Shown in pieces: positions 58,801 through 64,000 of a stretch of 64,000 nucleotides of DNA (position 1 is the first letter of the stretch; each line of letters begins with the position of its first letter). The notes beneath the pieces were generated by a model. That model searched no databases and was not told the origin of the DNA. It saw only the letters and a list, made by a program, of their open reading frames with translations. Source of the stretch: Selaginella moellendorffii (taxonomy: Eukaryota; Plantae; Lycopodiophyta); NCBI RefSeq assembly GCF_000143415.4, contig NW_003314261.1, positions 2,429,266 to 2,493,265 on the forward strand. Direction: 5' to 3'. The position numbers were made by a program, and so were the translations under genes.

Positions 58801-59470
58801 ACAATGCCCCTGTCTAATCAGAAGCTAGAAACTAGGTATATTATATTATATATTAGTTTTCTAATTTTAAAGGTAAAACTGATGGTATATTATTATTTTG
58901 CTGCGTGTAATAGTAATGTTATTTCTATTTATTAATCTAATTAATCAAATGGAAGTTTATAATTATAAACATGTTTATAATTTATAAATACAAGATTAAT
59001 ATCATTAAATATCAACCATTAGATGGTAAAATAAACTAGAATATACTAGGACGTATTTAAAAAAGTTTATAAATTATAAACATATTTATAAATTATAAAT
59101 GCAGGATTAATTTAGCCAACCTTGCCAGGACAGCAGAAAGTAGTGAGAATGATAACCAGGAGGACGTGGACGACTATGGCAACTTGTTCATGGCCACTAG
59201 TATCCAGTAGGTTGCAAAGAACACACTTGGCATAGAAGCAGAGAAGTTGTGTTAAATGGTAAAATATTTTAGAATATTCAAATATATTCTAAATATATCC
59301 TTACCACCTTTACAGGTTTGCTTAAGCAAACTAAAAGAGAGAGTCATTGTTCTTTAATTTTAAAATTATATTAAGAAAACAGTATTTTATCTAAAATTTG
59401 ATTATTTTATATTTATGGGGAAGTAATATTTAAATCTAAAATAATAAACCATAATTAATCAAATATATTC

Positions 59471-59640
<170 letters not shown>

Positions 59641-59990
59641 CACTTTAATCAAAAATTGCAAAAATATGTTTAAAATATCATAGCTAGGTTCTTGTTTTCT
59701 AGCGGCAGCACACGGCCAGTGCCATGGCCAGGCTGATGCGCCAGGCCGCAGCGCTTAGGTTTGTCAACCAGATCTGAGTTTCAGGCACGAAGATAAACCA
59801 ACAGCCACAACTAGTCATAGCCAAGTGAGTGCTTATATTGCAGCCACACAGCTTGATGGACTGTGAGAGTTCTTTCAGGGCTAGGCGATGATCAAGATGT
59901 CCAGGTTCTTTATCACAAGTCTAGGCGTTGGAAATCCTTCACCCAAGAAAAGCAGCCTTTTATTATTATTTGATAGAACTGAATAACAGT

Positions 59991-61040
59991 CTAGAGTTGG
60001 AAGGTCCCTGATTTTTCTGGAGGAGGGATCCACCCAATTCCATGGTATCTAGCACTCAACCATCCCCATTCTGCGTTTGCGGCCATCCACACCTCTACCC
60101 CATTCACATAATCCATGACGCCTTGCTTCCTGGCAAGCCCACTTGAAATGATCTCCTGCTTTGTCCCGATGAACTCCTTCTCCAAATCCTCCACCATGCT
60201 CGCCAACATGGCAATCGCCTCGTTCAAACCACACTTGTGAATGCTGGCGAGAATGGGCACGGCGTTGAGGTAGTTCCCTTTCGCCCACTCCTTCCTGAAC
60301 GAGATCAAGTCATTGTGGAGCGCAATGTGGTGCGTCCCAATCTCCTCAACCTTGCGTATGAGAGGATGATCCAGCACGCCACGCTCTTCCAGCCCAAGTT
60401 GCAGTAAACCATCAAGCATAGCAAAGCAAGGCGCAACACCAGATGTGATCTCTCTCAGCCACATGTACGTGTCCAGGTTGGGAACGATTTGCTTGTGAAG
60501 CCAGTTCGATTCAATCTCAAACATGTCGAGCACCTTGGTCATAGAATTCATGAATCGGCCGGATTTGTCCACTAGATGGAGGGACAGTTCTTTCAAAACC
60601 TCAGATAACATCTTCACTTGCCTCAGCAGCTCCTGATTCTTGACCAGAAGTGCGGCCTCGTCAAATCTTCCCTTGAAAACCATCTTGTATGCGGTTGCCA
60701 CGTTCCTCATGTCCGACGAAGAGATCTCAGGGTTATCCAGAATGTCATCTGCAAGAAAGAGCCAAGCGATGAACTTTGCAACGGGAACAATCTTCTCGTA
60801 TGAAATGCTCGGGTATGCATAAGCTGCGAGCAATCCAAGCCTGCTCTCTCGAATAAACACAGATTTCTCGCTTCCAGGTTGCAACTTCAGAAACTCGTCA
60901 CACCACACATTGATCTCAGCGTCGGCCTTTGCATCATACAGCGGATTCAGCGCTGGAGAGGCCAGAAGTTTATTACTTGCTGGTGGAATGGAGTAGCTTT
61001 TCTCCGCTGCAAAAATGCTCACAATGGATAGAATAGCCAT
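59991..61040 (-). CDS. Microbial terpene synthase-like protein (MTPSL, SmMTPSL1-like), intronless, about 349 aa
   Basis: Single alpha domain with DDILD, LREITSG (pyrophosphate-sensor Arg), NDLISFRKE (NSE), and W....RY. Confidence 0.93.
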   Translation of the reverse strand: MAILSIVSIFAAEKSYSIPPASNKLLASPALNPLYDAKADAEINVWCDEFLKLQPGSEKSVFIRESRLGLLAAYAYPSISYEKIVPVAKFIAWLFLADDILDNPEISSSDMRNVATAYKMVFKGRFDEAALLVKNQELLRQVKMLSEVLKELSLHLVDKSGRFMNSMTKVLDMFEIESNWLHKQIVPNLDTYMWLREITSGVAPCFAMLDGLLQLGLEERGVLDHPLIRKVEEIGTHHIALHNDLISFRKEWAKGNYLNAVPILASIHKCGLNEAIAMLASMVEDLEKEFIGTKQEIISSGLARKQGVMDYVNGVEVWMAANAEWGWLSARYHGIGWIPPPEKSGTFQL

Positions 61041-61891
61041 TAAGAAAACACAACACAATTTCTAACCACGACTTCTCGGTATATATAGAGCTATTCTCGT
61101 TAGAAGCAAATTCCAAATCTATTACAGTTGCGATGTTGCCGAATTTTGCGAAAATACCTAGGAAACATCCAAAAGTCAGGTTTGAATTGCTGATTTTAAA
61201 ATATTCAGTCATAAAATGTTAAGCACATAGTATTGACTTAAATGGTAGTGAATGAAGCTAGAGTATATTACCGTCTAACCACAACTTCTGGGTATATATA
61301 AAGTTATTCCTGTTAGAAGCAAATTCCAACTCTACTATAGTACGTTTGCGATGTTGTTGATTTTTGCAAAAATACTTAGTAATCTGCTTTTCTATATTGA
61401 TATATATAATATACATTTAGATTAATCTATGTTAATGTATAAACGTTCTTAAACATGAATTCAATTTAGCCCGCTGGTCTTATTCAATTTGTGTTTTGGC
61501 ATGTGAAAGCTGATAAATAGGCTGCTCAAAATACTAAGCACTATGCAGAGATTTAAATTGCCCCATGCTTTTATGTAACAAAAAAGGTTGAAAAGCACTT
61601 TACTCTTTGCTAGCATCTCCACATTTTGTAACACTACCTTCTCAAGCTCAACTGTTACTGTGGACAAATACTATTTTGTTTTTAATCTAGTTTTCTATAC
61701 AAATCTTTTGAACTACAATATATATTCCAGCAATTTGAAGAAGTGGGTGGTGTATGGAGGTAGTCCTACCAAACACTAGAGGAACCAACCCTCTCCCTCT
61801 CCCCCTGGACCAACCCTTTTTCATTTCGTGGAGGTAAGAATTACTAAGAGTTAGAGGTAAATGGAAAAGAAAATTACCAATTAGTGAAAAT

Positions 61892-62573
61892 TCAGCGTTT
61901 ACTGGGCTCTTGGGTGGAGTTTGTCGATCCGACCACTTGGGCGATGAATTCCTGGCCAATTCCCGCCCCATTCTTCCTCTGGGAGAAGATCCGGATTCGC
62001 CCAACATCCGGATTCGCGATGCGGGTGAAGGCTTCGTAAGAGAGATCGAAGGAATTAGCGTGACAGCCCGGGCAGAGATCCACGACCCGGACGGTGACTG
62101 TAGCGTCGTTCGACCGGCATCCTCCAGCGCCAGAGACCGCGCCCTTGCAAGTGATATCGAAGTAGGCGCCGCAGAGGCCATTGAAGATATCGGGGCTGGC
62201 TGCCGCGATCAAATTTCCGGCTGGAAAGGGCCCGCGATCGAAGCCATAGCAAGCCGATGCTGTGATCACACACAAGGGGCAATCAATCAGTTGGTCGAGA
62301 GGAAGAATTGATTGAGCGCTTTGAATCGAGGAACTCACGAACGTATTCCGTGTAGAACGTTGCCTCGCCATTTCCTCCTCCGCCGCCTCCGCTACACCAG
62401 TTACACTGGCTTTGGCACCCATTGCCGCAGTAATCCGCGGAGCATCCACAGTAGCCCCATTGGCTGCAACACATGTTGTCTCCACAAGGGCGATTGCGAT
62501 CACACTGCTGGGCGGTGGCCACCATAGCCGCCGCTACCAGCAGCGAGAGGAGGAAGATCAAACGAGGACTCAT
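61892..62573 (-). CDS. Secreted hevein (CBM18) + EG45/plant-natriuretic-peptide-like DPBB fusion protein, 2 exons
   Basis: Signal peptide; [23 protein letters not shown]; Gly hinge; intron 62338-62260 (GTGAGT..CAG) joins [14 protein letters not shown]; [23 protein letters not shown]. Confidence 0.88.
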
Positions 62574-62969
62574 ACTTTTTTAGCGAGGATAGACCGTGGA
62601 TATGATTTATAATATGGATGTATGTAGCTAGGCTCGCAAAGTTGGAATAGAACTCTACAACCATATATATTAATCATTCCTCTTTGATTGAAAATTTCTT
62701 TGGGCGGGAGTTCCGGCGATTATACACCGTGTTGTCCACCGTTGGATCAAGGGATTTAAAAGCTCGAGGAGAAACGAGGGTTAGGGTTTATGCGCACCCA
62801 AGTTCTACTGCAGCGTCGTCGTGCTCGCTTTGCGGCCGCGCCGAGGTACGCTGTGAGTTTTTATCAGTGCGTAGATTCACCGTCGAGCCAGCTGCTTGAG
62901 GCTGCGCCTTAGATCCATGGCGCTTTCTCCAATGATCTGGCTCACATTTCTTGCCGTAGATCGCTTTTA

Positions 62970-64000
62970 TTACGAAGTCTTTGCTCGATCCCTATGGATT
63001 GCTTCTGTCCGTATTGTTTTCCTGCATTTCTTGCATTGCCCGTGACCGCAGCACTGCCTCCTGCTCGCTTTTTGGTAGAGCATTAAACATGAAGATAGAT
63101 TTGTCCCCAATGTCATCCTGGCAGTGGTTTTTTTCTTTAGAAGATTTGAAAGGAAGCAGAGAAGGTCTACCTTTATTGGTTGTGTGAATTTCCTGCCAGC
63201 GAAAACCGCAAAGAGACCCATCCAGGCCGCCAGTAGACCTTGCTTTACGTTGTCATCCATCGCTCCCGACTGATATGCCGCAATGAGTTTTTCTTATAAG
63301 AACTTTGTGCAGGCATGAAAATGGGATGCGTACCAGGTGACCCAAGAGCAAGGATGGTATCACGAAGAAGAGGAGTGCCGCCTCTAGTTTTCCATAGCAC
63401 AATCCTGACGAACGAGCCATAAGTGGTGGTGAGTTCCATTTTTTTTTTCTTTCTGAAAGGAGAGCTCAGTGTTACCTTCTTTGAAAACCAGGCCTGTGAG
63501 TGCTGCAAAGAGAGGCCCGACTGCCCAAACCGCAGCGGGATTCTCCACAACGAATTCCACCAGACCCCTGTCAGCTGGAGTGGCGAAGTTGGATGCTACA
63601 AGTATAGAACCAGCCACTCCGACTGTCCATAGGACTTGCAACGCTCGCTTCAGTGGAGTGACGTAGATGTGTATGAGCAGCAGGGACACCCCGAGTGACC
63701 CGGCTCCAATCGAAAAAAGTAAGTCTTGATAAGTTGAGATCACAGACTTGACAACATTGTCTTCCGGTAGGAACGCCGTAGACGCTACCGCGACAAATGT
63801 AGCTGCCGATGTTACTAGACCAGCTCTGTACAAGAAGACCTGGAGACACAAGGAAATCATGTCACAGTCCACAACGGGTAAAAGTCGGTGGTGATGGAAG
63901 TAAGTGACACCAAATCTCAAGAAAAAGGACGATGGTCGACGAAGATTCAGGCATTACCTCGCGCACGTCGGTCGAATCAATCGACCAGGGGCCGTAGACA
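62970..64000 (-). CDS. DUF2301 integral membrane protein (chloroplast/cyanobacterial type), 5' part outside the window
   Basis: VYGPW, LYRAGL, LLLIHIYVTPLKR, VGPLFAALTGLVFKEG, RKFTQPIK.DIGDKSIF; the exact stop is uncertain. Confidence 0.82.

What the first reader, a model, noticed from the sequence alone, without database searches (positions are those of the whole stretch)
61892..62573. Hevein chitin-binding domain fused to an EG45/natriuretic-peptide-like DPBB domain rather than barwin or chitinase
Seen: signal peptide, 8-Cys-type hevein core, Gly hinge, then [14 protein letters not shown]...IAAAS...CG....ITC...[10 protein letters not shown]...DLSYEAF..IA.PD.GRIRI, and a ~30-aa C-terminal tail. 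Known: hevein domains normally precede GH19 chitinases or barwin (class I PR-4), while the YVPSACYG and DLS.EAF signatures belong to expansin-like EG45/PNP proteins, which are usually single-domain. Inference: a chitin-targeted wall-loosening or antifungal protein built independently of PR-4. The tail could be a vacuolar sorting propeptide. The gene lies about 850 bp upstream of, and co-oriented with, the MTPSL gene.
Basis: partly seen in the sequence, partly recalled or inferred. Interest (0 to 1): 0.7.

Follow-up and report, generated by a model that had tools for sequence, protein, structure and literature searches.

The report
Known spikemoss hevein–expansin-like chimeric lectin gene
This is a real, expressed two-exon Selaginella moellendorffii gene for a secreted protein that joins a chitin-binding hevein module to an expansin-like (EG45-type) barrel; the gene and its domain combination were already catalogued in 2019 and 2023, but its function has never been tested.

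Summary
A minus-strand gene has exon 1 at 62573..62339, a 79-nt GT..AG intron at 62338..62260, and exon 2 at 62259..61892. It encodes a 200-aa precursor: signal peptide, hevein domain (PF00187, 39.6 bits), Gly hinge, DPBB_1 domain (PF03330, 51.5 bits) and a roughly 26-aa tail.

- **Splicing:** assembled contigs from four public runs of four studies skip exactly 62260-62338, so the two exons are joined in RNA.
- **Not barwin:** there is no Barwin Pfam hit. The closest relatives are EG45-like proteins at 45-57% identity. The predicted fold is closest to expansin domain 1 (Z 15-16), against about 12 for barwin-like proteins.
- **One correction:** the hevein module has 10 cysteines, not 8.
- **Not new:** the model's mass (20,944 Da) equals that of Smo437354, published in 2023 as "hevein fused to PF03330". 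A 2019 lectin survey tabulates hevein/RlpA-like DPBB proteins in Marchantia, Sphagnum, Physcomitrella and Selaginella (one copy), and hevein/barwin only in seed plants.
- **Family context:** I recovered moss relatives with 1-3 heveins, and independent fusions in a fungus, a slime mould and a rotifer.
- **Earlier scan work:** a follow-up on another piece of this genome (s1-430337) reached the same verdict.

An antifungal role (chitin anchoring plus non-hydrolytic wall loosening) is inferred, not shown.

The parts
62574..62688 (-). 5' UTR (upper bound uncertain). It contains two upstream ATGs, at 62677 and 62664.
   Evidence: RNA-like contigs end at 62688 (X1, X2) or 62598 (X8).
62511..62573 (-). 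Start codon and signal peptide (about residues 1-21, [21 protein letters not shown]).
   Evidence: Translation. It aligns with the signal peptides of the moss homologues. Smo437354 was predicted Sec/SPI in PMC10378081. The cleavage site is inferred.
62394..62504 (-). Hevein / CBM18 chitin-binding domain (residues 24-60), a 10-Cys variant. Ser37, Trp39, Tyr41 and Tyr48 align with the hevein sugar-binding residues.
   Evidence: PF00187 at 39.6 bits. Sequence alignments to WGA, pokeweed lectin-C and hevein.
62367..62393 (-). Gly-rich hinge (SGGGGGGNG).
   Evidence: Translation. pLDDT below 50 in the model.
62339..62366 (-). First strand of the DPBB domain (EATFYTEYV plus the first base of the Pro codon). 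This is the end of exon 1.
62260..62338 (-). Intron, 79 nt, phase 1, GT..AG.
   Evidence: Skipped exactly by contigs of 4 runs from 4 studies. The same intron position occurs in a moss genomic contig, L001.
61973..62259 (-). Rest of the DPBB_1 (EG45-like) domain: six Cys, with conserved Thr72, Asp139 and Asp150 (precursor numbering).
   Evidence: PF03330 at 51.5 bits. Invariant columns. Fold matches to expansin domain 1 at Z 15-16.
61895..61972 (-). C-terminal tail (…[26 protein letters not shown]) with an N-glycosylation sequon. Candidate C-terminal sorting propeptide.
   Evidence: Translation. The motif SG(I/V)GEE..I.QVV is shared with a Selaginella paralogue and moss homologues. pLDDT is below 50. 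The tail is a separate exon in moss L001. The function is inferred.
61892..61894 (-). Stop codon.
61517..61891 (-). 3' UTR (lower bound from the longest contig).
   Evidence: Contig X1 record 1 starts at 61517.

Best explanation
SHOWN: this is an expressed two-exon Selaginella moellendorffii gene, identical to the JGI model Smo437354. It encodes a 200-aa secretory-pathway precursor with a signal peptide, a 10-Cys hevein (CBM18) module that keeps the sugar-binding Ser and aromatic residues, a Gly hinge, an EG45/PNP-type DPBB_1 barrel with six Cys, and a disordered conserved tail. It belongs to a family found in liverworts, mosses and this lycophyte, and not seen in seed plants, where hevein is paired with barwin instead. 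INFERRED: it is a defence chimerolectin. The hevein module anchors it to chitin in fungal (or arthropod) walls. The expansin-like barrel keeps the Thr/Asp/Asp groove residues of expansin domain 1 and shows no conserved second acidic residue of the kind a GH45-type hydrolase needs. It would therefore bind and non-hydrolytically loosen the chitin/glucan network, weakening hyphae or exposing them to chitinases. The acidic-hydrophobic tail with an N-glycan sequon may act as a C-terminal vacuolar sorting propeptide, as in prohevein and cereal lectins.
For: Gene structure and splicing. Identity: nr protein P0001 is 100% identical over exon 2. The piecewise mass of 20,944.3 Da equals the published 20.944 kDa of Smo437354. 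Domains: Pfam. The hevein motif [19 protein letters not shown] aligns to WGA, pokeweed lectin and hevein. EG45 affinity: 45-57% identity to EG45-like proteins, with conserved G.ATFYT.YVPSACYG and [18 protein letters not shown]. Fold: expansin domain 1 at Z 15-16, rmsd 1.7-1.8 A over about 99 residues, ahead of kiwellin (12-13) and barwin-like proteins (about 12). Family: proteins with 1-3 heveins plus DPBB_1 in Sphagnum, Ceratodon, Physcomitrium and metatranscriptomes, some as uninterrupted ORFs on cDNA-like contigs. Published table. Precedent for expansin-type barrels acting on chitin: loosenin-like proteins bind alpha-chitin more than cellulose and alter mycelial density (PMC9888185), and expansin-like proteins aid chitin depolymerisation (PMC11036043). 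The same pair of domains was also found in a fungus, a slime mould and a rotifer, which suggests the two work together.
Against: There are no binding, activity, localisation or induction data for this protein or any family member. Angiosperm relatives (PNP-A) are described as apoplastic signalling proteins, not wall-loosening agents. The hevein part of the model is only moderately confident (pLDDT 64-74), and the extra disulfide is inferred. The tail has no diagnostic sorting motif. The absence of a catalytic base was judged from alignment conservation only.
Confidence: 0.6

Rival explanations
1. Pro-peptide model. As with prohevein, the precursor is cleaved at the Gly hinge. This releases a small 10-Cys hevein-like antimicrobial peptide as the active agent, and the DPBB domain acts mainly as a carrier or folding partner.
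For: It has the same overall layout as prohevein/PR-4: signal peptide, hevein, hinge, barrel, tail. The hinge is predicted to be flexible. Free 10-Cys hevein-like peptides are a known class (EAFP2 matched). A Physcomitrium gene annotated as a hevein precursor is induced by Fusarium solani (PMC9933782), though whether that gene belongs to this family was not determined.
Against: The DPBB domain is more strongly conserved than the hevein module across the family, with many invariant columns, so it is under selection of its own. Single-domain paralogues keep the barrel and lose the hevein.
Confidence: 0.15
2. Signalling model. The barrel works like angiosperm PNP-A, as a secreted ligand perceived by a receptor kinase. 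The hevein module tethers or gates the signal in response to chitin.
For: The nearest named relatives are EG45-like/PNP-type proteins. PNP-A is described as an apoplastic stress signal.
Against: No receptor or active-peptide region was examined here. The fused and unfused bryophyte/lycophyte proteins form a clade separate from the angiosperm proteins (98/97 support). Recurrent CBM18+DPBB fusions in non-plants argue for a carbohydrate-directed role.
Confidence: 0.12
3. Self-wall model. The protein acts on the plant's own wall like an expansin, and the hevein module binds GlcNAc-containing plant glycans rather than fungal chitin.
For: The fold is closest to expansin domain 1. Transcripts occur in many runs from 8 studies without a known infection.
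Against: It lacks expansin domain 2 (CBM63): no such domain was found in Pfam or in the fold search. Hevein domains are chitin-directed wherever characterised (established knowledge).
Confidence: 0.08
4. Enzyme model. The DPBB_1 barrel cleaves chitin or peptidoglycan glycan chains by a single-Asp, lytic-transglycosylase-like mechanism.
For: Pfam names PF03330 'lytic transglycolase'. MltA appears among weak fold matches. Asp139 and Asp150 are conserved.
Against: The best fold and sequence matches are to non-hydrolytic expansins. MltA matches are marginal (E about 0.04).
Confidence: 0.04
5. Gene-model artefact. A hevein exon and an EG45 exon belong to two separate genes.
For: None remains.
Against: Spliced contigs in four runs from four studies join the exons in frame. 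Homologues exist as uninterrupted 210-aa ORFs on cDNA-like contigs. Two database models agree.
Confidence: 0.01

Closest known systems
Smo437354 of Selaginella moellendorffii (PMC10378081, 2023), and the 'hevein/RlpA-like DPBB' class in Supplementary Table 3 of Van Holle & Van Damme 2019 (PMC6362431)
   Same: It is the same gene. The mass is identical (20.944 kDa), as are scaffold-level uniqueness, the Sec/SPI signal peptide, PF00187 + PF03330 and the expansin templates. One copy is listed for Selaginella.
   Different: Those papers only catalogue and model it. They do not note its EG45/PNP affinity, the 10-Cys hevein variant, the conserved tail, the conserved intron, the two subfamilies or the RNA evidence.
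[quoted passage not shown]
   Same: DPBB_1 domain with six Cys. Shared motifs are G.ATFYT.YVPSACYG and [23 protein letters not shown], at 45-50% identity.
   Different: The angiosperm proteins are single-domain (about 130 aa), with no hevein module and no C-terminal tail. They fall outside the bryophyte/lycophyte clade.
Class I PR-4 proteins (prohevein, WIN1/WIN2, AtHEL): hevein + barwin
   Same: The same design: signal peptide, hevein, hinge, a DPBB-fold domain and a C-terminal extension. Both are probably defence proteins.
   Different: The barrel here is PF03330, not PF00967. There is no Barwin hit at E<=1, and barwin-like structures rank below expansins and kiwellins (Z about 12 against 15-16, rmsd 2.9 against 1.8 A). 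Hevein/barwin is tabulated only in seed plants.
Expansin domain 1 (BsEXLX1, Xa/Ss_EXLX1, EXPB1) and fungal loosenins
   Same: These are the best structural matches (Z 15-16, and 11.8 for PcaLOOL12). The Thr/Asp/Asp positions of the groove are conserved. Loosenins bind chitin.
   Different: There is no CBM63 domain 2. The targeting module here is an N-terminal CBM18.
Kiwellins
   Same: Plant DPBB defence proteins with a similar fold (Z 12.3-12.9).
   Different: About 21-27% identity, no family-level sequence match, and a different N-terminal module (kissper rather than hevein).

Membership tests
Hevein / chitin-binding type 1 (CBM18, PF00187) | Profile match above the curated threshold | tested here: met
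   39.6 bits against a cut-off of 27.8, E 6e-10.
Hevein / chitin-binding type 1 (CBM18, PF00187) | Eight canonical Cys plus the Ser/aromatic/aromatic/Tyr sugar-binding residues (hevein S19, W21, W23, Y30) | tested here: met
   All 8 Cys align. S37, W39, Y41 and Y48 occupy the binding positions. Two extra Cys make this a 10-Cys variant.
Hevein / chitin-binding type 1 (CBM18, PF00187) | Actual binding of chitin or chito-oligosaccharides | not testable with these tools
   Needs recombinant protein.
EG45-like / DPBB_1 (PF03330) | Profile match above the curated threshold | tested here: met
   51.5 bits against a cut-off of 28.8, E 1e-13.
EG45-like / DPBB_1 (PF03330) | Six conserved Cys and the ATFYT / PSACYG / VDLCPGC / DLS..AF motifs shared with named EG45-like proteins | tested here: met
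   Invariant and near-invariant columns in 11- and 69-sequence alignments.
EG45-like / DPBB_1 (PF03330) | Double-psi beta-barrel fold | tested here: met
   Model pLDDT of about 90 in the barrel. Z 15-16 to expansin domain 1.
Barwin / PR-4 (PF00967) | Profile match to Barwin | tested here: not met
   No hit at E<=1 for this protein. Only moss subfamily B shows sub-threshold matches, at 13-18 bits against a cut-off of 21.
Barwin / PR-4 (PF00967) | Barwin as the closest fold | tested here: not met
   4jp6 and 7ksn score Z 11.9-12.1, rmsd 2.9 A and 22% identity. They rank below expansins and tie with kiwellins.
Canonical expansin | Two domains: DPBB domain 1 plus CBM63 domain 2 | tested here: not met
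   Only a disordered tail of about 26 aa follows the barrel. The fold matches stop at the end of domain 1.
Plant natriuretic peptide (functional PNP) | Receptor-mediated signalling activity of the active region | not testable with these tools
   Only homology to EG45-like/PNP-type proteins was shown.
Kiwellin | Family-level sequence match and the N-terminal kissper region | tested here: not met
   No Pfam or PDB sequence match. The fold match alone gives Z 12-13.

The most novel reading that the evidence does not exclude
The hevein-EG45 fusion is the ancestral land-plant counterpart of class I PR-4. It arose before mosses and vascular plants split, and it works as a chitin-anchored, non-hydrolytic loosener of fungal walls. 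In seed plants it was either replaced by hevein-barwin, or barwin is a divergent descendant of its barrel. Three observations fit this reading: the complementary phyletic pattern, the faint Barwin signal in moss subfamily B, and the shared 10-Cys hevein and intron position between Selaginella and mosses.
Probability: 0.15. Interest if true: 0.5.

Novelty: already known. Interest (0 to 1): 0.22.

Why it matters
The finding itself is a correct re-discovery of a catalogued gene, so it adds little. The open questions around it are modest but real:

- No member of this liverwort, moss and lycophyte family has been assayed.
- The family appears exactly where class I PR-4 (hevein-barwin) is absent.
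- The same two domains also occur together in a fungus, a slime mould and a rotifer.

A demonstration that an expansin-type barrel aimed at chitin weakens fungal walls would define a new mode of plant antifungal action. It would also clarify how the PR-4 layout evolved.

Tried and rejected
- **Barwin membership:** rejected by Pfam and by fold ranking.
- **Gene-model artefact:** rejected by spliced contigs.
- **Tandem paralogues in the window:** none. tblastn finds only this locus.
- **Literature searches:** hevein+EG45 found no paper. Hevein+DPBB and hevein+natriuretic peptide+expansin found only unrelated papers. The relevant papers came from a hevein+Selaginella+domain architecture+lectin search.
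- **Single origin of all plant fusions:** not resolved. Subfamily B sits on a long branch with no supported placement. The fused state needs about 5 changes on the DPBB tree, which has only 110 columns and many open forks.
- **Joint tree or profile comparison with barwin sequences:** not done, because no barwin sequence was fetched.
- Exons were searched separately by reference. Full-length work used the database protein P0001, which lacks the first 16 residues. The precursor mass was summed piecewise.
- **RNA status of the runs:** they are recorded only as 'RNA?'. Their RNA nature is inferred from their small assembly size and the exact intron skip.

Full report
**Observation.** The finding's coordinates (61892-62573) are the coding span of a minus-strand gene.
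- Exon 1 (62573..62339) encodes [23 protein letters not shown], then a Cys-rich module [37 protein letters not shown], a Gly hinge, and EATFYTEYV.
- A 79-nt intron (62338..62260, GTGAGT...CACAG, phase 1) follows. The split codon C|CA gives Pro.
- Exon 2 (62259..61892) continues SACYG...[35 protein letters not shown], then a tail and a stop.
- Pfam scored each exon separately by reference. Exon 1 matches Chitin_bind_1 (PF00187) at 39.6 bits (cut-off 27.8). Exon 2 matches DPBB_1 (PF03330) at 51.5 bits (cut-off 28.8). There is no Barwin match at E<=1.
- Full-length analyses used the database protein P0001.

**RNA evidence.** Twenty public runs hold the stretch. I laid contigs of four runs from four different studies on window 61500-63000. 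Each has one contig that skips exactly 62260-62338 (CT..AC on the + strand, GT..AG on the gene's strand) with at least 255 nt on either side.
- These runs are recorded only as 'RNA?'. The precise loss of a canonical intron shows they carry spliced transcripts.
- The transcript spans about 61517 to 62598-62688, so it includes the ATG at 62573.

**Identity.** The exon 2 product is 100% identical to an nr protein, 'EG45-like domain containing protein [Selaginella moellendorffii]'. This is P0001, 184 aa, with PF03330 + PF00187.
- P0001 starts at Met17 of my model and so lacks the signal peptide.
- The upstream ATG lies within the transcript, and the extension aligns with the signal peptides of moss homologues.
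- The mass of the 200-aa model, summed piecewise, is 20,944.3 Da. This equals the 20.944 kDa listed for Smo437354 (scaffold 0, Sec/SPI) in PMC10378081.
- That paper states that in this sequence the hevein domain is fused to a 'lytic transglycosylase domain (PF03330)', and it modelled the protein on expansin templates.

**Which kind of barrel?** Three lines of evidence separate it from barwin.
- By sequence, relatives are EG45-like proteins: a single-domain Selaginella paralogue (74%), moss and metatranscriptome proteins (54-61%), and angiosperm EG45-like proteins (45-52%). They share G.ATFYT.YVPSACYG, six Cys and [18 protein letters not shown].
- Against PDB sequences, only bacterial and fungal expansins, papain inhibitor and an RlpA-like loosenin match. 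Barwin and kiwellin do not.
- An AlphaFold2 model of P0001 built from 69 sequences has a barrel pLDDT of about 90, a hevein pLDDT of 64-74, and a hinge and tail below 50.
- Foldseek ranks expansins first (E 4e-8), then kiwellins (about 1e-5), GH45 (1e-4), barwin-like proteins (1e-3) and cerato-platanins (1e-2).
- VIA-align gives expansin domain 1 Z 15-16 (rmsd 1.7-1.8 A, 31-34% identity), kiwellin 12.3-12.9, and barwin-like proteins 11.9-12.1 (rmsd 2.9 A, 22% identity).

**The hevein module.** It aligns with WGA, pokeweed lectin-C and hevein. The Ser and three aromatic positions are kept as S37, W39, Y41 and Y48. It has ten Cys rather than eight. The extra pair (CG-C and C-x-x-C at the end) is shared with moss homologues, so a fifth disulfide is inferred.

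**The family.** A profile word search and an exhaustive profile search, followed by my own domain HMMs, found 24 of 277 fetched proteins with both domains. None is from a seed plant.
- Subfamily A has the 10-Cys hevein in 1-3 copies and a tail ending ..I.QVV. It includes the Selaginella gene, Sphagnum troendelagicum and many metatranscriptome proteins, some as uninterrupted ORFs on cDNA-like contigs of about 1.27 kb.
- Subfamily B has a canonical 8-Cys hevein and the motif IVDRCPNGCSGGRAFDLS. It includes Ceratodon and Physcomitrium. NCBI names the Physcomitrium protein 'WIN2' although it is DPBB_1.
- A moss genomic contig has its first intron at the same codon position and a second intron before the tail.
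- On a DPBB tree, all subfamily A proteins plus several single-domain moss and Selaginella proteins form a supported clade (98/97). The Selaginella gene is sister to its hevein-less paralogue (95/76). This fits an old fusion followed by later losses of hevein. Subfamily B is unplaced.
- The same pair of domains also occurs in Gonapodya (fungus), Physarum and a rotifer.

[quoted passage not shown] It lists none in ferns or seed plants. 'Hevein/Barwin' appears only in Picea, Arabidopsis and Glycine.
- The main text of that paper does not discuss this class.
- An earlier follow-up in this scan, on another piece of the same genome, reached the same verdict (s1-430337).
- The finding is therefore correct but already known.

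**Mechanism (inferred).** I read this as a secreted or vacuolar defence chimerolectin, with a CBM18 anchor on chitin plus an expansin-type barrel.
- The positions matching BsEXLX1 T12, D71 and D82 (residue roles from my own knowledge of the expansin literature) are conserved as T72, D139 and D150.
- No further acidic residue is conserved that could serve as a GH45-type base, so a non-hydrolytic action is the most likely one.
- There is precedent. Loosenin-like proteins bind alpha-chitin better than cellulose and change mycelial density (PMC9888185). Expansin-like proteins promote chitin depolymerisation (PMC11036043).
- The tail is disordered, conserved, acidic-hydrophobic and carries an NST sequon. 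It resembles C-terminal vacuolar propeptides of cereal lectins (my own knowledge), but no motif test exists.
- The rivals are hinge cleavage releasing a hevein-like peptide, PNP-like signalling, action on the plant's own wall, and lytic activity. They are listed with their refutation tests.

**Context.** The co-oriented downstream neighbour (59991..61058) is a microbial-type terpene synthase (PF19086, 111.6 bits), 834 bp from the stop codon. A PPR gene follows.

Noticed in passing
window 62570-62688 (minus strand): There are two upstream ATGs in the putative 5' UTR, at 62677 and 62664. The 35-codon uORF from 62677 ends in a TGA that overlaps the main ATG (ATGA at 62573-62570). In one run the contig ends at 62598, so many transcripts may start downstream of both uATGs.
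   Followed up: partly
window 62659-63313 (+ strand): There is a divergent neighbouring transcript. Loose ends at 62846 continue with the sequence found at 63314 onward, implying a + strand GT..AG intron at about 62846-63312. Unspliced contigs covering 62817-63000 also exist. The two genes are head-to-head with at most about 100-200 bp between them. However, unitig ends here may only reflect graph branches.
   Followed up: partly
P0001 (nr model of this gene): The NCBI protein model starts at Met17 and so lacks the signal peptide. The JGI model (Smo437354, 200 aa) fits the transcript and the homologues better.
   Followed up: yes
P0089 (Physcomitrium patens): NCBI names this protein 'wound-induced protein WIN2', a PR-4/barwin name. 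Its barrel nevertheless matches DPBB_1 (40.3 bits) and matches Barwin only below threshold (13.2 bits). The model also looks truncated at the C-terminus.
   Followed up: partly
P0152, P0222, P0242, P0269: CBM18 (1-4 copies) plus DPBB fusions also occur in Gonapodya prolifera, Physarum polycephalum, the rotifer Rotaria sordida and an unnamed metatranscriptome protein with a transmembrane tail. These look like independent inventions of the same pairing.
   Followed up: partly
L001:2670-3786: This is a metagenome contig of a Sphagnum-like moss. A prokaryotic gene caller split one three-exon hevein-DPBB gene into three 'genes'. The first intron is at the same codon position as in Selaginella, and the tail is a separate exon.
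   Followed up: yes
window 59436-59661: There is a long imperfect (TATATA/CA)n-type simple repeat just downstream of the terpene synthase ORF.
   Followed up: no
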